From assembly GCF_006345805.1 (NCBI RefSeq), contig NC_043001.1:19592001-19656000 (forward strand): a stretch of DNA of 64,000 bases. The letters run 5' to 3'. The DNA comes from Octopus sinensis (taxonomy: Eukaryota). Of this stretch, positions 6,308 to 40,781 are shown piece by piece. The notes beneath the pieces are model-generated. The model worked only from the letters and a program-made list of their open reading frames with translations. It had not been told where the DNA came from and searched no databases. Position 1 is the first letter of the stretch; each line of letters starts with the position of its first letter. Position numbers and translations under genes: made by a program.

Positions 6308-6469
6308 ATCCAGGGCTTTGCTGGTACCTTTTCATGCAAAACTGCCCAGGTACATTTGCTTCGAAGCTATTACAATCAATTAAACCATTAACTTTAGTAT
6401 CAAATGCCTCCGATGATGGACAAGAAATATCTTCATTGCTGTCACATTGGTAACACTGTATGGCAATAC
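6308..6469 (-). CDS. Gene A exon 2: (G)IAIQCYQCDSNEDISCPSSEAFDTKVNGLIDCNSFEANVPGQFCMKRYQQSPG
   Basis: Acceptor tttcgttttag|, donor T|gtaagt, 162 nt open, phase 1-1. CxxC start and Cys spacing match LU/QVR-type domains. Confidence 0.9.
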
Positions 6470-6778
6470 CTAAAACGAAAGCAAATTAAATAAAAAGCAC
6501 ATTAGCATCAATGATTCAATACAAAATTACAATTTCTATGAACAGAGAACAATAAGCGTTTTTTGTCTTGCTTTTTGTTTTTTTAGATATTTCCCTCATA
6601 TTTTATTGGTTTTTTTTTTTATTTCTCTCTTCATGAAATATTTTAATACGATACTGGTTTGAGAGAAAAGAATGATGGCAATTCTTGAATAGATATCCAA
6701 AGTGAAATTTCAACAATCCTTGAGTTATATCATTCTTTAAATACTGTAATTTTTTAAGAAAATTTGCATTCTTATATC

Positions 6779-17117: not shown

Positions 17118-18444
17118 AAAAAGCTTTTAAAGTTTGCAAATTGGGGATAATTTTAGCCAATCGAAAGTCACAGACATATCGGTGTCTATTTCCATAGTAA
17201 CAAGCCAAGCTGTTATCAAGCTGCTGACGCACGTGGTCATGTTTCGCTTACTGAATGCTTAAAACACCTGCGGTATGAGGTGGTCATGAGATATGCTAAA
17301 AATAATAACTAAATAGGCCTTAACTCACGCACCTTTTTTGCTTCTTGCATAATTGTATGGATTCCTAAGTATAGAATACAAATTCGCAAAAATTTTCTGA
17401 GAATTCCCAAAAAATAAAAAGTTAGGAGGGTTATATGGCGTGCGGAAAGCATAATTCCGCCAACATTTCGTTTGTTTATAATTGGATACTTTGGGGTTAT
17501 CTCACCCCCATTAAAATATTGGGTTATCTCCCCCACGTTTTATGAGAAACAGCGGTACTTTTGGTTATCTCCATCTACTAAAAAAATTGTTTAACCCTTA
17601 ATAGAACATAATATAAAAAGTGAATCGATGAAACCTCGTATTGAATCTGATAATATTTTTATAACAAAGCATACATAACTGAAAAGATTAATAAACATGG
17701 AAACTGAAAAAATTAACAAACACGAAAACTGAAATAATTAAACATCTTAATGAATCTGAAAACATTTTTATAACAAATCATACAATGCTTATTGGGGAGG
17801 CCAAACGTCAACAATGTGTTGAAGTATTGAATCAAAAGGATCTAACCCTTTTAATCCAATCTCTTGTCGCCACATAAACTCAATTTTTTAGTGGGGAGAT
17901 AACCCAGTTTTTTAATGGCAAATTTTTAATTGGGGTGAGTTAAACAAAAAGTACCTACAATTAACACGTGCAATCACGCACAAGATGACAGCTTCCAAAT
18001 CCTGTTTCCAAACTGGGTAAAATTTATCAAACTTTTTTTCATTTTAATTTTCTGGAAAAAGTAAACTTGTCCCTGAGATTCAGCGTGGAAAATTACATCA
18101 GCCAACCAAATTTTTTCAATTTTCAGTAAACTTTGAAATGTCCACTGGTGTAGCTGAACAGAAAAGATCCGCAGTGTGTTGTCCGTCTCTTCTCCATTCG
18201 GTACCAGAAAGCTTATTGATCAAAGTTATTGACCCAAAAGACTGACCAAGCCCTCGCTGGATATTTATAAAGTTTGGCAACTAAAGTAGGTCAACCTAAA
18301 ACAACGGATTGACTTTTCCATGACCTGAGAAGGTCCCAGGGGTCAACTCATCCTCATTAATCACCAAGTGCAAAGAGGAGAAAACAAAGGCCGGAAATTC
18401 ATCTAACAATGAATTAAAATGTGAATTTGGTTTCGAACTAATAT

Positions 18445-20460
18445 ACAGACAAAAATCAGTGTCTATAAAGCGTGTGTATTGAGTACACTTCTTTACTCAA
18501 ATGAGACGTGGACCACTTACAAACGTCATATAAAAATGCTGGAGAGATTTCGTCAAAGGTGCCTCAGATGTATTTTAGGAGTCAAGCGGGAATGTTTCGT
18601 ACCAGATACAGAAGTTTTGTGCATGATACGTTGTAGCTCAATTGAACAACATGTTATCTTGGCTCAAATAATATGGACTGGACACGCTATTAGAATGAAA
18701 GACGACCGATTGCCAAAGCGTTTTTTTTTTTTTTACGGTGAGCTCAACTCTGGTAAGCGATCACAACATAAGCCGTGGAGAAGTACAAAGACTGTGTGAA
18801 GGAAACCCTGAAGAAACTAGATATGAACAAAGGTAATTGGGAAAATGATGTTATAGATCGGAACAAGTGGAGAGATGCTGTTAGGACTGCTTGCAATGCC
18901 TAGGAGGAAAAGATGATTCGGCACTTTGAGCTTAAAAGGGTCTGTCTCAAAGGAACGATTGGAATTGTAACCAACAGTGAACATTGGATATGTATCATAT
19001 GTGATTGTGTTCTGTTGTCAAAATATTCTTCTTGACCACCTGAATGGGCGACTCGTAAATGGTGTCCTATGTGAATCTCAATGTGGCTTCCAATCTGGTA
19101 GAGGAACAATGGATATGATTTTCACAGCAAGACAGATACAGAAGTGCTATGAACAGAATATGGAACTTGTCCAAGGTATTCATTGATTTAACCAACATAT
19201 TTGATACTGTGAATAGGGCCTTGCTATGGAAAGTACTTGGCAAACTTGGATGTCCGGATCACTTTGTATCTATAACTAAATCATTTCATGATGAGACGGA
19301 GGCTTGTGTCAATGTTGGTAGTGGCTCGGCGGGACCCATTCCTATAGAGAATAGTGTCAAGCAGGGTGACATTCTTGCCCCAACTCTCTTTCCATTTTAC
19401 TTTGCTGCTGCTTTTACTCATGCTTTTGCTAAGGTTAGCTCTCTGGGAATATATGTCAGGTATCGATCTTCTGGCCGCTTCTTTTATTTGCGCTGATTTG
19501 CTGCCAATTCAAAAGTTTTCCAGTCTCTTATTCGTGACCTCATTTATGCAGATGACTGTGGCTTAGTCACTCATACAGTGGATGACACGCAACTACTTAT
19601 AAATCGTATTTCTGCTTCTTGCAAAGCTTGTGGACTCAGCATTAACCTGTGCAAGACTGTCGTAATATTCCAGCCTGCACCAGGATATCCATATGTGGAA
19701 CCAGCTGAAGGAACAATACTAAAAGTGGTAGACAAGTTTGTCTACCTAGGCAGCACACTCAGCCGTTCTTGCTCCCTGGATGATGAAATATCTTTCAGGT
19801 TGCAGAGAGCAACTGATTCCTTCCAATCTCTTCAGTCTTGTGTCTGGTCCCAGCATGGCATCACAAGGCAAACAAAAATATACCGTGCATGTGTACTGAC
19901 ATCGCTCCGTCACTCATGTGAGACATGGACCTTTTACAACTGTCATGTAACGCTTTCATCAGTGATGTCTGAGACACGTTTTGAATGTTGGCTGAACCTT
20001 AAAAAGACCAGACACACAGATCCTGAGGAAAGCTGATATCTTCAGTATTACAGCGATAGTGCACAAGCTCCGGTTACGATTGACTGGACACTTTATTAGA
20101 TTAAAGGATAGCAGGATCCCTAAACAGATGCTATATAGAGAGAGCTTGTTAGTGGAAAGAGACTCCTGCAAAAACCAAGGCTGCGATTTAAGGGCTGTGT
20201 CAAGTCCTCATTAAAGGCCTGTGATATGCAGGAGACGGACTGGGAGAGCAATGCCTGTCATCGCCACAGATGGAGGAAACAGGTTACAAAGGTGGTCGAC
20301 ACTTTTGCGAGAGTACGTATTCTGCATAAAGACTTTAAGCGTGCTGCATGAAAGCGTACCGCTTGTGTAGTGAATGGGGAAAGCTTGGTTTGCAATGTTT
20401 GCAGTCGTGTATGCTTGTCAAGAGCAGGGCTCATTAACCACCAACGGAGCCGCAAATACA
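18445..20460 (+). mobile_element. RTE-clade LINE fragments (C-terminal piece 18445-19015 joined to an RT-to-end piece 19030-20460)
   Basis: QCGFQSGRG, FIDLTNIFDTVNR, VKQGDILAPTLF, LYADDC, FVYLGS, LLYSNETW, WTGHAIRM and a terminal C2H2-like CNVCSRVC..H; many stops and frameshifts. Confidence 0.9.
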
Positions 20461-21392
20461 AAATATAAGTTAGTCTCTATGTAGTCATTGAATGAGCTCG
20501 AAATAGAAGCCAAATATCCCTCAACTCACACTCTACAGTCTTCATTATAACATGCACTGTAGATGAATAAGCAGCTGCCTTGTACAGCGAATTCTCTGTT
20601 TATGTCCACAAAGAAGTCTCTGTGTATTCGTTCTACATACTAAAAATAGAAGACAAATTTCCCTCGGTTCTCTCTTTACTGTCTTCATCCAGCGAAGGAC
20701 ATATTGGATAACGTAGTCCATTGCCTGAAAAAGATGGGATGGTCATGAGTGGAATGCTGTTGATTACATTTCAGCTCCATCAAGGTCGATGTGGGGTTAA
20801 ACCACAACACGAGTTTATCTCTCGTTTCGTAATATACAGTAAATATTTACATTAAGCACTCAATTGAAGATGTATATTTATTTTATCCTTTTGCTAATTT
20901 CAGTCATTAGATTAGGACTATATTAGGACATTGATTTCAGCCTTTCAGTCAATTGAAATGAACCAAGAAGTTAATCATGTACTCATTGTCTAGATTTCAA
21001 TTAACTAAGTACACAGAGTTACCTCCCGTCTAAAAGAGTTGCCTCCCATGACAAACTTCCTCCCTACCGAAAATTTATAACCACATTTAAGAACAAAGGA
21101 TCTTTATCTAGCAACCTATTTTTTATAGGAGGCGGGAAAAAAAGGTCTAAGCATAAAAGGTTATATTTTAGAGAAAAAAAAAAGAATTACTTCAACAAGG
21201 AAGCAAAGTAAAAGAAAAGGTGAGAAGGTTGAGCAACAAAAGATAGAGAGGGTTAACAGGTTGTACATCCCAACCCAACCCAAATGGTGTATGCAGCCGC
21301 TAATCTCGGACATAATTGCAAAGGCGTTGCCGCGAAGAATGACCAACTCGCGAGGTTCATTTCTCAGACAAGCCGCTGTTATCCCGGGTTCG

Positions 21393-21478: not shown

Positions 21479-21864
21479 TTGAGAGACAGTTTTGTGCCTT
21501 ACCATGGGTTCCTAGGGAGCGTTTTGATCGAATAGCTTGCTGCGCATTTGTTTGGAGATTTAAATTCCTGGTTTTTCCTGAAGAGAAAGCTGCAAAACGG
21601 TCTCCTTATTCAATCCGAATTTGGAAATTTGCAGCCTTTGAAACATGTGTAGAAAATAATATAAAGGAATTTTGTAGAATCTTCGTTCAGCTCCATTTCT
21701 TCCCTTCACTAAATATATAAAACTTCAATTATCCGCGCTAAGGCACGGTTGCGACACCCCATGGTCGTAACCTCAACCGTGTTTTTTCTGTTGTGATTTT
21801 TGCTACCCAGGTATCGGTTAAATTTTGAATAATCCGTAACAAGATAATTCATTTATCCATTTCA

Positions 21865-22017
<153 letters not shown>

Positions 22018-22300
22018 TGGCCTAGTGGTTAGGGCAGCGGACTCGCGGTTGCAGGATCGCGGTTTCGATTCCCAGACCGGGCGTTGTGAGTGTTTATTGA
22101 GCGAAAACACCTAAAGGTCCACGAGGTTCCGGCAGAGAGTGGTGTACTCTTTCACCACAACTTTCTCCCACTCTTTCTTCTGTTGGCCTGCTCGCTTAGC
22201 CAGCGGGGTGGCGTCATTCAAAGGCTAAAACAATGCGAACGCATTGTGACCAGCGATGTGTAACAACATCTGATGGTCTGGTCGGTCACGTGGTCACGTG
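22018..22300 (+). mobile_element. SINE-C, third tail variant
   Basis: Same head, different 3' part ending (GGTCACGT)n. Confidence 0.75.
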
Positions 22301-35040: not shown

Positions 35041-35258
35041 CTAAAGATCATAGCTTAGGTACTGTCCAATGATGGCAATAAATACAAGGAAAACTGTACT
35101 GTACAGGCTTGATCCACTATTGCATTTATCTTTGTCTGTGCAGTAACAATAAAACATTTTTATATCATCAGTGCCAACTTTATAGTCGCATTTGCCGACT
35201 ACACCATCTTCTGCACACTGTCTGATGTATCGTGTTTCCCATTCCTCCTTGACTTTGA
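35041..35258 (-). CDS. Gene B terminal coding exon: (I)KVKEEWETRYIRQCAEDGVVGKCDYKVGTDDIKMFYCYCTDKDKCNSGSSLYSTVFLVFIAIIGQYLSYDL*
   Basis: Acceptor tgtatttttcag|, in frame with the 37810 exon. Completes a 10-Cys LU domain ending in CN, followed by small residues (SGSS) and a hydrophobic tail typical of a GPI signal. TAG at 35043-35041. Confidence 0.9.
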
Positions 35259-35407
35259 CTGAAAAATACAAAGAATAATTTGATAAGATTAATCTAAAGT
35301 TTCATGAACAAAATCCTCATCATCATTTAACATCCACTTTTCCATGCTCACATGGGTTGAACATACTTTGCTTCAGTAGATTCTCCTATAGCTAGATCCC
35401 CTTTGGC

Positions 35408-36024
35408 TATCTATCTGCAGCTTTATATAGCTATGGTGCGACCTCACCTGGAATTTGCATCACCAGTCTGGAACCCCTATCTTGCCCACGATATTAATCA
35501 TCTGGAAGCCGTTCAGCGACGTGCAACCAAGAGAATACCCTCCATCAGGCATTTGCCATATTCTGAACGCCATACTTCCCTGGGCATGGATACTTTGAAA
35601 CTCCAACTTCTGGCAGCTGACTTAGAAGACACCCATAAAATTATCAACCATCTTACAAACAATAACTCTGAGCACCTTTTCAAACTCCACCCATCTAACA
35701 CCCGTGGACATGTTTACAAAGTCAGAAAACAGCACAGCTCCCTTGACTTTCGGAAACATTTTTTCACGCTAAGAGTTGATGAAGCATGGAACAAACTGCC
35801 GACATCAGTTTTTAGTTATCGGAGCACTGCATCCTTCAAAACTTCCATGCTTCCTGAGATTCGCCAACACCTGATTTTCCCCCCTCCATACACACACAAG
35901 CATGTATCTGACTCATACACTGTTCACTTTCCAGACATTTGTACATTACTGTATATGCTTTATACACACTTTTGACAAGTTGTGGTGCACCTGAGCACTG
36001 TATACAATAATTTCATTATTATTA
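35408..36024 (+). mobile_element. CR1-clade LINE 3' fragment in gene B intron (antisense)
   Basis: VRPHLEFASPVWNP..LEAVQRRATK..TRGH..RKHFFTLRV..WNKLP, then a 3' UTR ending (ATT)n. Confidence 0.85.
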
Positions 36025-36171: not shown

Positions 36172-36500
36172 TAGGCGCAGGAGTGGCTGTGTAGGAAGTA
36201 GCTTGCTTACCAAACAATTGGTTCCGGGTTCAGTCCCACTGCGGGGCACCTTGGGCAAGAGTCTTCTACTATAGCCTCAGGCCGACCAAAGCCTTGTGAG
36301 TGGATTTGGCAGACAGAAACTGAAAGAAGCCTGTCGTATATATATATGTATATATATATATATGTGTGTCTGTGTTTGTCCCCTCGCCTCAGCATCGCTT
36401 GACAACCGATGTTGGTGTGTTTAGGTCCCCGTAACTTAGCAGTTCAGCAAAAGTGACTGATAGAATAAGTACTAGGTTTATAAAGAATAAGTCCTGTGTG
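36172..36500 (+). mobile_element. SINE-B
   Basis: Head and body match. Confidence 0.75.
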
Positions 36501-37379: not shown

Positions 37380-37640
37380 ACATATATTGTGACATGTAAC
37401 ATAATTTAACAGACATAACAATTTATAATCTAATGAAGTATATAACAATATAATAGGACATATAACAATTTAATGGGACATGTAACATAATTTAATGGGA
37501 CATGTAACAATTTATAATCTAATGAAGTATATAACAATATAATAGGACATATAACAATTTAATGGGACATGTAACATAATTTAATGGTAATGTATAACAG
37601 TTTAATAGGACATATCATTTAATTTAATGGAACATACATA
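37380..37640. repeat. AT-rich minisatellite (about 20-bp AATTTAATGGGACATGTAAC core, with a 90-bp higher-order duplication)
   Basis: Repeats directly visible in the gene B intron. Confidence 0.7.
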
Positions 37641-37809: not shown

Positions 37810-37941
37810 TTTTCTGCACAACTTTTCTACATCCCTTGTCCGTATCAGAGCAATTCGTCACAAATTCAGAAGAATTACTTAATGATAGCCCACAGCCTTC
37901 ATTATAAAACGAGTTGCAGTTATGACATTGAAGTCCATATC
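37810..37941 (-). CDS. Gene B (Ly6/uPAR, quiver/crooked-like GPI-anchored protein), internal exon: YGLQCHNCNSFYNEGCGLSLSNSSEFVTNCSDTDKGCRKVVQK
   Basis: Acceptor tttttaaag|, donor A|gtaagt, 132 nt, phase 1-1. Contains 5 Cys and the N-glycosylation sequons NSS and NCS. Confidence 0.9.
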
Positions 37942-38356
37942 CTTTAAAAATTACAAAAAAAAACAAAACATTTCTTAATTTATAACAAAACATTGATATG
38001 TAAGTTTGTCTGCATGTATGTATGTCATTGTTCACTTTTATTTCAAGATTTCTTGCCAATAGAGAAAGAGCTGGTTTCTAACCTAGATCCAAGGCACCTT
38101 CATTGGAATTTCAACATCAACAACAGGGTATGTTTGATTGTATGTATATATGCATGTATATTTAAGTAGTTGAATGAATTATCCTAGTATGGATAATTCG
38201 GTTAACCGATACTCGGGTGGCAAATTCACGTCAGAAAACACGGTTGAAGCTACATGCCAAGGGCAGAGATCACGTACTTTCGTGTGGAAATTTGTGTGTT
38301 TTTTTTAACTATAAATAAATGAAAGAATGGAGTCGAACGACGATTTAACAAAATTC

Positions 38357-38450
38357 CCTTATTCTCGACATATGTTTCGAAGACTGCATATTCCTAATTT
38401 CGAAGGAATAAGGGGTGCATTATGCCGCCTTCTCATCAGGAAAGACAAGG
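38357..38450 (-). ncRNA. Type I hammerhead ribozyme (minimal, Penelope/retrozyme type)
   Basis: Minus strand reads CCTTGTCTTTC-CTGATGA-GAAGG...TCTTC-GAAA-CATATG-TC-GAGAATAAGG. All core nucleotides are present, with a GUC cleavage triplet, and stems I, II and III can be drawn. Confidence 0.75.
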
Positions 38451-38929
38451 AACTTATGTCAGCATCATGACGAACAAAAACTTTTAGATGACTGCCCACA
38501 CGGAGTCCATAGTGATAATGCATGTTATAGTATAGTATAGTATATATGCATGTATGTATATGTGCAGATTTGTATATTTTGCTTTATGTATGTATTCTCA
38601 TGCATACAGTTGTATATCGAGACATGTTCATATATATATATATAAATGTTGTGTGTGTATGTATGTATGTATGTATGCTGTGTGAGCAACTGGTTGTTTT
38701 AACGGTGGAACAAATAGGGGATTTCCATTAGAAAAGTTTTAATCGATTTTCTCAGTAACTATGGGGTCTAGGGGAAAAATACAAACTGCATTCCAATCTA
38801 TGCACCCGTTTCCACATGTGTGCCATTTTTCACGTGAATCCACCCAGCCGTTTGGCTGTGAACCTCAAGACAAGAAAGAATACAATGATCACCCATGTCC
38901 AATTCATATTATAGATATATATCATCAAC

Positions 38930-39445
38930 GTCATCATCGTTTAACATGTTTTCCATGCTAGCATGAGTTGGACGGTTCCACCGGGGTCTGGGAAGCCAGG
39001 AAGCTGCACCAGGCTCCAATCTGATCTGAATGCTTCTACAGCTGGATGCCCTTCCTAACACCAACCACTCCGTGAGTGTACTGGGTGCTTTTTACGTGCC
39101 ACCAGCACAGATATCACAACTACAATTTCCATTTGATTTTTATTTTGATGTTGATGTACTTGACTCACTAGATATCCTCAAGCACAGCAGGTCGCCCTAC
39201 AATCCAAAATAAGCACAGCAGGCCATCCTGCGATCTAAGGTACTTTGGATGGGTTGGGGCTGCTATGTGAAGCTGGTGCAGGAAACAGCCATGAGGTGAA
39301 GGAATCATCATCATCATCGTTTAACATCCGTTTTCCATACTAGCATGGGTTGGACGGTTCTGGGAAGCCAGGAGGCTGCACCAGACTCCAGTCTGATCTG
39401 GCAGTGTTTCTACAGCTGGATGCCCTTCCTAACACCAACAACTTC
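38930..39445 (-). mobile_element. Two SINE-D fragments
   Basis: 3' blocks at 38930-39130 and 39305-39445. Confidence 0.7.
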
Positions 39446-39473
39446 CTGGGTGTAGCTATACACACATAATGTT

Positions 39474-40141: not shown

Positions 40142-40781
40142 TTAACTCTTTAGCATTTAAATCGACCAATATGCAGGAGTGGCTGTGTGGTAAGTAGCTT
40201 GTTTACCAACCACATGGTTCCGGGTTCAGTCCCACTGTGTGGCACCTTGGGCAAGTGTCTTCTACTATAGCCTCGGGCCGACCAAAGCCTCGTGAGTGCA
40301 TTTGGTAGATGGAAACTGAAAGAAGCCCGTCGTATATATGTATATATAAATATATGCGTGTGTGTGTTTGTGTGTCTGTGTTTGTCCCCCAGCATTGCTT
40401 GACAACCGATACTGGTGTGTTTATGTCCCCGTTACTTAGCGGTTCGGCAAAAAGAGACCGATAGAGTAAGTACTGAGCTTACAAAAGAATAAGTCCCGGG
40501 GTCGAGTTGCTCGACTAAAGGCGGTGCTCCAGCATGGCCGCAGTCAAATGACTGAAACAAGTAAAAGGGTAAAGAGTATATCCAACCCAAATATTCTACG
40601 TGTTTTATGTTCAAACAGGCCAGGTCTGGCATCTCATACCTACTCTTCAATGTCATTCTAAAAATATTGAAGGACATCTTTGAAATTTCAGCAGTATGAG
40701 GTAAGGCATGATTAATTCAAAACAATGTGGATAAAATATGGATTATATTTGACAGAATAATTTGAATGCTTAAAGGGTTAA
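40142..40781. mobile_element. piggyBac-type MITE interrupted by a SINE-B (40172-40577)
   Basis: TTAA-CTCTTTAGCATT start and AATGCTTAAAGGG-TTAA end; the body resumes after the SINE. Confidence 0.6.

What the first reader, a model, noticed from the sequence alone, without database searches (positions are those of the whole stretch)
38357..38450. Canonical hammerhead ribozyme on the sense strand just upstream of gene B's LU exon
The catalytic core is complete (CUGAUGA at 38439-38433, GAAA at 38378-38375, GUC with predicted cleavage between 38367 and 38366). Stem II (GAAGG/UCUUC) extends into a branched hairpin, and stem I (UUUC/GAGA plus CCUUG/UAAGG) has an internal loop suited to tertiary contacts. 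Stem III is the short palindromic ACAUAUGU typical of Penelope/retrozyme hammerheads, which often need dimers. It lies about 420 nt from the splice acceptor, so it could cut the Ly6 pre-mRNA co-transcriptionally. No partner copy is visible nearby, so activity in cis may be low.
Basis: partly seen in the sequence, partly recalled or inferred. Interest (0 to 1): 0.8.

Follow-up and report, generated by a model that had tools for sequence, protein, structure and literature searches.

The report
Transposon-borne hammerhead ribozyme in octopus intron
The hammerhead ribozyme motif is really there, but it belongs to a 380-base mobile element that recently landed in an intron of an Octopus sinensis Ly6/"sleepless"-type gene, so it is an ordinary transposon hammerhead and not a regulator evolved for that gene.

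Summary
The minus strand carries CUGAUGA (38439-38433), GAAA (38378-38375) and GUC (38369-38367) in type I topology, with three helices. A descriptor of this kind is expected 0.025 times per 64 kb. Rfam Hammerhead_1 is the only family that matches a 126-nt slice, but below threshold (19.9 vs 34 bits), because helix II holds a 50-nt insert.

The window is Octopus sinensis CM016863.1. The motif lies in sense orientation about 410-425 nt upstream of exon 2 of LOC115211811, a Quiver/Ly6 protein, inside a 33-kb intron 1.

The motif is part of a 380-nt insertion (38539-38160) flanked by a 16-bp target-site duplication. O. vulgaris shares the insertion. O. bimaculoides has the empty site and still expresses the same three-exon gene.

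Both keep all 12 essential core bases (P about 3e-4). Four helix pairs show compensatory changes.

No second sense copy lies in the transcription unit, and helix III is only 2 bp. This is best read as a solo copy of a retrozyme- or SINE-like hammerhead retroposon. Cleavage of the Ly6 pre-mRNA is possible but probably weak and incidental.

The parts
38540..38555 (-). Upstream copy of the 16-bp target-site duplication ATACATGCATATATAC
   Evidence: the 16-mer occurs at 38555 and 38159 (minus-strand reading) but only once at the orthologous O. bimaculoides site (L009 37854).
38160..38539 (-). 380-nt non-autonomous retroposon (copy B) that carries the hammerhead. Present in O. sinensis and O. vulgaris, absent in O. 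bimaculoides.
   Evidence: empty site plus duplication; homology to copy A limited to the element.
38351..38455 (-). Whole type I hammerhead motif, from the outer end of helix I to its 3' strand
38440..38455 (-). Helix I, 5' strand: distal AAGUUCCUU, internal loop GUC, proximal UUUC
   Evidence: 92.6-100% of cells paired in three copies, with one compensatory pair (C-G to U-A).
38433..38439 (-). Core CUGAUGA (C3-A9)
   Evidence: Copy A has CUGAAGA, which differs only at the free position N7.
38379..38432 (-). Helix II, a 54-nt extended imperfect hairpin closed by G10.1-C11.1
   Evidence: three compensatory pairs in helix II. Rfam aligns it as a 50-nt insert.
38375..38378 (-). Core GAAA (G12 A13 A14 A15.1)
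   Evidence: invariant in all copies.
38368..38375 (-). Helix III palindrome ACAUAUGU: 2 bp plus an AUAU loop as a monomer, or an 8-bp intermolecular duplex in a dimer
   Evidence: duplex -7.0 kcal/mol. Copy C has ACAUGU and copy A has ACAUGUGU.
38366..38367 (-). Predicted cleavage site, 3' of C17 (38367) and before G1.1 (38366)
   Evidence: Follows from the hammerhead numbering applied. Not tested experimentally.
38351..38366 (-). Helix I, 3' strand (GAGA, loop AUA, AAGGGAAUU)
38144..38159 (-). Downstream copy of the 16-bp target-site duplication
21501..21885 (+). Copy A of the same element (68% identical). Its hammerhead spans 21562-21672, with CUGAAGA at 21578-21584, GAAA at 21640-21643 and a GUA site ending at 21651. 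It shows decay: G10.1.U11.1 and one A.C mismatch.
   Evidence: (relaxed descriptor).
37811..37941 (-). Exon 2 of LOC115211811, encoding the first half of the Quiver/Ly6 domain
   Evidence: (identical to XP_029636377.1).
35041..35259 (-). Exon 3 of LOC115211811 (rest of the domain, C-terminal hydrophobic tail, stop)

Best explanation
The motif is a genuine type I hammerhead ribozyme carried by a roughly 380-nt non-autonomous retroposon. The element resembles animal non-LTR retrozymes and SINE-like hammerhead elements.

**History of this copy (shown).** One copy inserted by target-primed reverse transcription, leaving a 16-bp duplication. It landed in sense orientation in intron 1 of the Octopus sinensis Quiver/Ly6 gene LOC115211811. 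The insertion happened after the split from O. bimaculoides and before the O. sinensis/O. vulgaris split.

**Role in the element (inferred from known families).** In the element's own RNA, helices I and II form and the conserved core docks. The chain is cut after C17, leaving a 2',3'-cyclic phosphate and a 5'-OH. In known families this trims multimeric or read-through transcripts to unit length, for circularisation and reverse transcription by a partner Penelope-like or LINE enzyme.

**Consequence at this locus (inferred).** Helix III is only 2 bp with a palindromic loop, so efficient cutting probably needs a second copy to form an 8-bp intermolecular helix III. The host transcription unit contains no second copy. 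The solo intronic copy is therefore expected to cut the pre-mRNA weakly if at all, with no selected role for the gene.
For: **Motif and fold**
- The core and three helices are present.
- Helices I and II appear in the minimum-energy fold, both alone and within the full element.
- The hammerhead-constrained fold lies within 3.3-4.0 kcal/mol of the minimum for copies B and A.
- Hammerhead_1 is the only Rfam family matching the slice.

**Mobile element**
- Homology between the two window copies is confined to about 320-390 nt, with no colinear flanks.
- The insertion has a 16-bp duplication, and O. bimaculoides shows the empty site.
- A third copy and a 5'-truncated tail fragment lie on another chromosome.
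- All copies abut TA/TATG microsatellites.

**Constraint on the ribozyme within the family**
- All 12 essential core positions are invariant in three copies, while about 50% of other columns are invariant (P about 2-4e-4). The only core change is at N7.
- 96% of 78 pair cells are paired, four pairs show compensatory changes, and slid controls reach at most 51% paired.
- The hammerhead is the best-conserved segment between copies A and B (78% against 55-68% elsewhere, and 74% in the 3' tail).
- The youngest copy (B) has the best motif. The G.U at 10.1-11.1 in copies A and C is a C-to-T change at a CpG.

**Context**
- There is only one sense copy in the 36-kb gene plus 10-kb flanks.

**Literature**
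- Animal type I hammerheads with a 1-2 bp helix III and a palindromic loop sit in Penelope-like elements and in 150-450 bp retrozyme repeats. Mussel units are 350-390 bp.
- These elements have low GC and duplications longer than 4 bp. Dispersed monomers, many of them intronic, are common (PMC4209133; PMC7229834; bioRxiv 10.64898/2026.07.22.740005).
Against: - Only three independent copies could be reached, so the covariation statistics are modest (20-41 of 500 shuffles reach the observed values).
- The score is below Rfam's gathering threshold. Copies A and C get no hammerhead hit at all.
- No tandem array, no circular RNA evidence and no adjacent Penelope-like ORF was seen. The only reverse transcriptase nearby is a LINE-type fragment that is not colinear with the element.
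- The 380-nt RNA is not unusually self-paired (z -1.15).
- Copies A and B share the same 5' and 3' ends. That fits a linear SINE-like unit better than a permuted circle.
- No cleavage or expression data exist.
Confidence: 0.75

Rival explanations
1. Exapted intronic ribozyme. The hammerhead has been recruited to cut the Ly6/Quiver pre-mRNA co-transcriptionally just upstream of exon 2. This would tune splicing or expression of the gene.
For: - The motif is in sense orientation, about 410-425 nt upstream of the exon 2 acceptor.
- This copy has the best core of the three, including G10.1-C11.1.
- The 153-nt region is identical in O. sinensis and O. vulgaris.
- From my own knowledge: conserved intronic type I hammerheads exist in amniotes (Rfam HH9/HH10).
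Against: - The insertion is absent from O. bimaculoides, whose orthologue keeps the same three exons and yields a full mRNA contig.
- Zero differences in 94 nt between two very close species is not significant. The whole element has 5 in 397, and about 2 would be expected in 94 nt.
- There is no dimer partner in the transcript, and the monomer helix III is 2 bp.
- Dispersed retrozyme monomers commonly lie in introns.
Confidence: 0.05
2. Inactive look-alike. The element is an ordinary SINE-like retroposon, and the hammerhead-like arrangement is a fossil or a structural module kept for another reason, such as recognition by the partner reverse transcriptase. It would have no self-cleaving activity in any copy.
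For: - The Rfam score is sub-threshold, and copies A and C are not recognised at all.
- The 54-nt helix II is unlike the 4-8 bp helix II of described animal hammerheads.
- There is no recognisable loop-loop tertiary motif.
- No tandem copies were seen.
- The shared discrete ends of A and B are typical of SINEs.
- Minimal hammerheads from Penelope-like elements cleave poorly in vitro.
Against: - A structural module kept for another purpose would not be expected to hold exactly the 12 catalytic positions invariant while letting N7 vary.
- The compensatory changes fall in helices I and II as drawn for a hammerhead.
- Helix III stays palindromic in all three copies despite length changes (ACAUAUGU, ACAUGUGU, ACAUGU).
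Confidence: 0.15
3. Pure chance match in unique intronic DNA.
For: At 0.025 expected hits per 64 kb, a 2-3 Gb genome would contain on the order of a thousand chance matches.
Against: The motif sits in a repeated element, and independent, 30% diverged copies keep the core and the helices.
Confidence: 0.02

Closest known systems
Animal non-LTR retrozymes (Cervera & de la Pena 2020, PMC7229834); the mussel Mytilus galloprovincialis family is the nearest described case
   Same: - Type I hammerhead with a 2-bp helix III capped by a palindromic tetraloop.
- Unit size of about 350-390 bp in a mollusc.
- Low GC (about 0.4).
- Target-site duplication longer than 4 bp.
- No ORF.
- Dispersed monomers occur, including in introns.
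   Different: - No tandem array at any of the three loci.
- The RNA is not markedly self-paired (z -1.15).
- Helix II is 54 nt.
- Two copies share fixed 5' and 3' ends.
- Circular RNA was not tested.
Hammerheads in the pseudo-LTRs of Penelope-like elements (Cervera & de la Pena 2014, PMC4209133; Craig et al. 2021, PMC8557442)
   Same: - Retroelement-borne type I motif.
- Short palindromic helix III that implies action as a dimer.
- Longer-than-usual helix II.
- Insertion next to (TA)n microsatellites.
- High sequence variability within one genome.
   Different: - No RT/GIY-YIG ORF adjoins any copy.
- There is no unpaired base between A9 and G10.1.
- Helix I is long (4 + 9 bp or more), not 4-5 bp.
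- The element is a 380-nt unit with its own duplication, not a terminal repeat of a 3-4 kb element.
Schistosoma Sm-alpha SINE-like elements with hammerheads (from my own knowledge; cited as the schistosome case in PMC7229834)
   Same: A short non-autonomous retroposon of a few hundred nt, dispersed in the genome, carrying an internal type I hammerhead.
   Different: - No sequence relationship was tested.
- A pol III promoter is not evident here: there is only a B-box-like GTTCGACTCC about 205 nt into the element, and ARAGORN finds no tRNA-like head.
Conserved intronic hammerheads of amniotes (Rfam Hammerhead_HH9 / HH10; from my own knowledge)
   Same: A type I hammerhead on the sense strand within an intron of a protein-coding gene.
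   Different: Those are conserved across amniotes at orthologous sites. This one is a lineage-specific transposon insertion that is absent from a congeneric species, and no Rfam HH9/HH10 match was returned.

Membership tests
Hammerhead ribozyme, type I (Rfam RF00163) | Conserved core: C3 U4 G5 A6 N7 G8 A9, G12 A13 A14, A15.1-U16.1, and H17 not G | tested here: met
   All positions are present in copy B and are invariant in copies A and C except N7. H17 is C, A and C in copies B, A and C respectively.
Hammerhead ribozyme, type I (Rfam RF00163) | Three helices around the core, with helix I open-ended (type I order: I-5', core, II, GAAA, III, H, I-3') | tested here: met
   26 modelled pairs, 96% of cells paired in three copies, 4 compensatory pairs.
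Hammerhead ribozyme, type I (Rfam RF00163) | G10.1-C11.1 closing pair of helix II | tested here: met
   Met in copy B. Copies A and C have G.U, a C-to-T change at a CpG.
Hammerhead ribozyme, type I (Rfam RF00163) | Score at or above the family's gathering threshold (34 bits) | tested here: not met
   19.9 bits, E 0.01, full-length model with a 50-nt insert in helix II, and only when a 126-nt slice is searched. No hit over the whole window or over 601 nt.
Hammerhead ribozyme, type I (Rfam RF00163) | Helix I / helix II tertiary contacts that give fast cleavage | tested here: inconclusive
   Internal loops exist in both helices (3x3 in helix I; 1x1 and a 12-nt bulge in helix II). No known contact motif could be assigned.
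Hammerhead ribozyme, type I (Rfam RF00163) | Mg2+-dependent self-cleavage 3' of position 17 | not testable with these tools
   Needs in vitro transcription or mapping of RNA ends.
Animal non-LTR retrozyme | Non-coding unit of 150-450 bp with a type I hammerhead and low GC | tested here: met
   380 nt; GC about 0.41 in the ribozyme region; only short chance ORFs.
Animal non-LTR retrozyme | Occurs as head-to-tail tandem repeats (dimers to multimers) | tested here: not met
   No tandem copy at B, A or C. Only three loci were seen, and dispersed monomers are known for such families.
Animal non-LTR retrozyme | Target-site duplications longer than the 4 bp of plant LTR retrozymes | tested here: met
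   16 bp.
Animal non-LTR retrozyme | Expressed as linear and circular unit-length RNAs that are highly self-paired | tested here: inconclusive
   The self-pairing part was tested and is not marked (z -1.15 against shuffles). Circular RNA cannot be tested here.
Penelope-like element (pseudo-LTR hammerhead) | Hammerhead lies in a terminal repeat flanking an RT plus GIY-YIG ORF | tested here: inconclusive
   No such ORF adjoins copies A, B or C. The RT fragment 1.5 kb upstream of A matches Pfam RVT_1, reads by eye as LINE-type (my judgement from its motifs), and is not colinear with the element. The whole window was not scanned against GIY-YIG profiles.
Penelope-like element (pseudo-LTR hammerhead) | Minimal architecture: unpaired base between A9 and G10.1, helix I of 4-5 bp, helix III absent or 1 bp | tested here: not met
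   There is no extra base after A9. Helix I is 4 + 9 bp. Helix III is 2 bp plus a tetraloop, which is closer to the 'canonical' animal type described.

The most novel reading that the evidence does not exclude
The element may represent an undescribed cephalopod family of hammerhead-bearing retroposons. Its ribozyme has a roughly 50-nt extended helix II, so it escapes Rfam annotation. The family was still mobile after the O. bimaculoides split, so it would create presence/absence differences in introns of neural genes such as this sleepless/Quiver homologue. Sense-oriented copies that retain activity would then cut host pre-mRNAs or seed circular RNAs.
Probability: 0.25. Interest if true: 0.45.

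Novelty: new member of a known kind. Interest (0 to 1): 0.3.

Why it matters
- **Genome annotation.** The case shows that threshold-level Rfam scans miss at least one hammerhead family in octopus genomes because of a long helix II. Counts such as the 235 Hammerhead_1 loci reported for the giant squid (PMC6962438) are therefore probably underestimates.
- **A natural experiment.** Two Octopus species carry a sense-strand ribozyme in intron 1 of a Quiver/Ly6 gene and a third does not. Any effect on splicing could be measured directly.
- **Limits.** The finding is not evidence for ribozyme-based regulation of the gene. Hammerheads in animal retroelements are already well documented.

Tried and rejected
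- **Metagenome scan.** A scan with the 21-mer TGCAGYCTTYGAAACATRTGT gave six hits. All match only the 21-mer, so they are chance matches and not homologues.
- **ORF as a handle.** I used the 54-aa chance ORF that spans the ribozyme to fish other copies from the protein database. No candidate was found.
- **Gene duplication.** I tested whether copies A and B are part of a duplicated gene. This is rejected: there are no colinear flanks and no paralogous LU exon near copy A.
- **Alternative fold.** A fold using the first GAAA (38401-38398), with helix II GAAGG/CCUUC and a long helix III, is rejected. That GAAA is GAAU or GGAA in copies A and C, and helix III would be only A-U plus U.G.
- **tRNA-derived head.** ARAGORN finds nothing.
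- **More sequence.** Extra Octopus loci were fetched to find further copies. L008, L013 and L014 contain none, and L014 merely overlaps L008.
- **Partner LINE.** Separate profiles for the 5', middle and 3' modules find no partner LINE sharing the tail in the sequence at hand.
- **Supplementary files.** Supplementary files were checked for two of the papers: none is held as text for the Penelope-like element paper (PMC8557442), and the one held for the retrozyme paper (PMC7229834) has no cephalopod or matching sequences.
- **microRNA hits.** The mir-297 and mir-3149 hits next to the element are TA/TG microsatellite artefacts far below threshold.

Full report
**1. The observation**

The minus strand of 38455-38351 reads:

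AAGUUCCUUGUCUUUC-CUGAUGA-GAAGGC...GUCUUC-GAAA-CAUAUGU-C-GAGAAUAAGGGAAUUU.

- The order is that of a type I hammerhead: helix I 5' strand, core, helix II, GAAA, helix III, H17, helix I 3' strand.
- RNAfold alone recovers helices I and II. They persist when the whole 380-nt element is folded.
- A fold constrained to the hammerhead is 3.3 kcal/mol above the minimum. Part of that gap comes from spurious pairs the program places in the core.

Two details need correction.
That register holds in all three copies and includes one compensatory pair.
- Helix II is a long imperfect hairpin of 54 nt, not a branched structure.

**2. Chance**

- I wrote a descriptor requiring CUGANGA, helix II of at least 4 bp followed directly by GAAA, A15.1-U16.1 plus one further pair, H17, and helix I of at least 4 bp.
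- It finds only this locus in the window.
- It finds 10 loci in 400 first-order Markov sequences of 64 kb, which is 0.025 per window.
- In about 308 kb of real Octopus DNA it hits only this locus and its orthologues.
- A genome of a few Gb would still hold on the order of a thousand chance matches, so chance is excluded by the comparative evidence below and not by the motif alone.

**3. Rfam**

- There is no hit at gathering thresholds in the window and no hammerhead hit at E<=10 in a 601-nt slice.
- In a 126-nt slice, Hammerhead_1 (RF00163) is the only family reported. The match is full-length (model 1-45), 19.9 bits against a gathering score of 34, E 0.01. The 50 nt of helix II are treated as an insert.
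- 'Canonical' therefore applies to the core, not to the architecture.

**4. Where the window comes from, and the gene**

- A LINE ORF in the window matches Octopus proteins.
- The putative LU exon, searched with X-padding, finds a 136-aa Octopus protein with the Pfam Quiver (QVR) Ly-6-like domain.
- Its cluster holds the O. vulgaris, O. sinensis (XP_029636377.1, LOC115211811) and O. bimaculoides orthologues.
- The O. sinensis locus (L011, CM016863.1) is 100% identical to window 64000-25041.
- The gene is on the window's minus strand:
  - Exon 1 lies about 7 kb beyond the window's end.
  - Exon 2 is 37941-37811.
  - Exon 3 is 35259-35041.
  - Intron 1 is about 33 kb.
- An O. bimaculoides mRNA contig confirms the three-exon structure.
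- The hammerhead is thus in intron 1, on the sense strand.

**5. It is part of a mobile element**

*A second copy in the window.*
- blastn of the surroundings against the window finds a copy on the + strand at 21561-21885 (70% identity over 329 nt, E 1e-29). nhmmer extends it to 21501-21885.
- Homology is confined to this unit, with no colinear flanks and no LU-like exon near the second copy. This is an interspersed repeat, not a gene duplication.

*The orthologous site in other species.*
- O. vulgaris has the element (L012 61623-61999).
- In O. bimaculoides the two flanks abut (L009 37793-37877 and 37864-38643).
- The 16-mer ATACATGCATATATAC flanks the insert at 38555-38540 and 38159-38144 but occurs only once at the O. 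bimaculoides site.
- That is a target-site duplication around a 380-nt insertion (38539-38160). The insertion was made after the O. bimaculoides split and before the O. sinensis/O. vulgaris split.

*A third copy elsewhere.*
- Another copy sits on a different O. sinensis chromosome (L007 18038-18204).
- An inverted, 5'-truncated fragment of the element's 3' tail lies next to it (17763-17676).
- 5' truncation with a retained tail, a 16-bp duplication, and ends abutting TA/TATG microsatellites are all what target-primed reverse transcription produces.

**6. The ribozyme is conserved within the family**

- The three copies are about 70% identical to one another.
- In their alignment (A3), all 12 essential core positions are invariant: C3 U4 G5 A6 G8 A9 G10.1 G12 A13 A14 A15.1 U16.1. 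About 50% of the other columns are invariant, giving P = 2-4e-4.
- The single change in the heptamer (CUGAAGA in copy A) falls on N7, the one position free to vary.
- Of 78 pair cells in 26 modelled pairs, 96% are standard pairs, and four pairs carry changes on both sides. Sliding the 3' partners by 1-3 columns gives at most 51% paired and at most 2 such pairs. With only three sequences, 20-41 of 500 shuffles reach the observed values.
- Helix III changes length but stays self-complementary: ACAUAUGU, ACAUGUGU (with a wobble) and ACAUGU.
- Between copies A and B the hammerhead is the best-conserved segment (78%). The 3' tail follows at 74%, and the rest is 55-68%.
- Copy B, the youngest, has the cleanest motif. 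Copies A and C have U at 11.1, where C11.1-G12 is a CpG, and copy A has one A.C mismatch. These are decayed copies, and Rfam does not see them at all.

**7. No sign of selection at this locus**

- O. sinensis and O. vulgaris differ at 5 of 397 aligned positions in the element and at none of the 94 in the motif.
- At that rate about 1-2 differences would be expected, so zero is not significant.
- A covariance model built from the three copies finds a single sense-strand hit across the whole gene plus 10-kb flanks. It finds nothing more in about 330 kb of Octopus DNA.
- The pre-mRNA therefore contains no partner for a dimeric helix III.

**8. How it most likely works**

*Shown:* the sequence can form a type I hammerhead, it rides on a retroposon, and the family keeps the core and helices.

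*Inferred from the described families:*
- Animal type I hammerheads with a 1-2 bp helix III and a palindromic loop lie in Penelope-like elements and in 150-450 bp retrozyme repeats.
- There they cut multimeric transcripts to unit length.
- The weakest ones work only as dimers. Invertebrate ones with a 2-bp helix III plus tetraloop can cleave as monomers at 0.1-0.8 per min (PMC4209133; PMC7229834).

*At this locus:*
- The solo copy could cut intron 1 after C17, but probably slowly. Helix III is weak, there is no partner, no tertiary contact motif is recognisable, and helix II is unusual.
- From my own knowledge: published work with engineered intronic hammerheads shows that cleavage within an intron often leaves splicing intact unless it is very fast.
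- The gene works without the insertion in O. bimaculoides. I therefore rate a regulatory role at about 5%.

**9. Classification**

- The element works like a retrozyme or SINE-like hammerhead retroposon. It meets the size, GC, duplication and ribozyme-type criteria of animal non-LTR retrozymes.
- I saw no tandem array, the RNA is not strongly self-paired, and copies A and B share fixed ends as a linear SINE-like unit would.
- It does not have the minimal architecture of Penelope-like element hammerheads, and no such ORF adjoins it.
- I therefore file it as a new member of the known class 'retroelement-borne type I hammerheads of animals'. The exact family (retrozyme monomer or SINE-like) remains open.
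- No report of this family in cephalopods was found in the searchable literature. Hammerhead_1 hits have been counted in the giant squid genome.

**10. Verdict**

Interest is modest.

Noticed in passing
window 21501-21885 (+): Second, older copy of the hammerhead element. It ends in a long (TA)n/(TATG)n microsatellite (21886-22020). Its core is intact, but helix II is weakened by G.U at 10.1-11.1 and an A.C mismatch.
   Followed up: yes
L007 17676-17763 (-) and 18038-18204 (+), O. sinensis CM016860.1: A 5'-truncated tail fragment and a 3'-truncated hammerhead-bearing fragment of the same family face away from each other about 275 nt apart. Each abuts a (TA)n run. This could be two insertions into one microsatellite, or one complex inverted insertion of the kind described for Penelope-like elements.
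   Followed up: partly
window 38398-38401 (-): A second GAAA inside helix II allows an alternative hammerhead-like drawing (helix II GAAGG/CCUUC). It is not conserved in the other copies.
   Followed up: yes
window 18430-20480 (+) and 35403-35975 (+): Fragments of LINE-type reverse transcriptases. ORF 19149-19493 matches Pfam RVT_1, and ORF 35403-35972 is 65-90% identical to the six closest hits in that search, three of which are named Octopus proteins ('jockey-like', 'Tick transposon'). The first contains stops and frameshifts. None is colinear with the hammerhead element.
   Followed up: partly
window 36177-36452 and 40173-40452; 38924-39080 and 39304-39454: Copies of abundant SINE-like Octopus repeats (88-94% identical pairs). 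They recur many times in the O. vulgaris and O. bimaculoides loci.
   Followed up: no
window 37391-37635: Tandem repeat in intron 2 of the Quiver/Ly6 gene, with an 89-bp period and 2.3 copies (two 83-bp stretches identical).
   Followed up: no
window 6411-6515 (-): A weak tblastn match (E 1.5) to the signal-peptide/LU start of the Quiver protein (…IAIQCYQCDSNEDISC…). It may be an exon of a second Ly6-type gene in the window.
   Followed up: no
window 38530-38690: Sub-threshold Rfam hits to mir-297, mir-3149, mir-466 and others are TA/TG microsatellite artefacts (16-32 bits against thresholds of 80-100).
   Followed up: yes
L012 (O. vulgaris OX597818.1) versus L011: The O. vulgaris orthologue is annotated with a 56-kb gene range and a 158-aa isoform carrying an N-terminal extension. 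The O. sinensis orthologue has a 36-kb range and 136 aa. This may reflect extra insertions in intron 1 or an annotation difference.
   Followed up: no
window 38327-38336 (-): The B-box-like motif GTTCGACTCC, about 205 nt into the element, is conserved in all three copies (GTTCAGCTCC, GTTCAACTCC). It is too far from the 5' end for a standard tRNA-type pol III promoter, and its meaning is unknown.
   Followed up: partly
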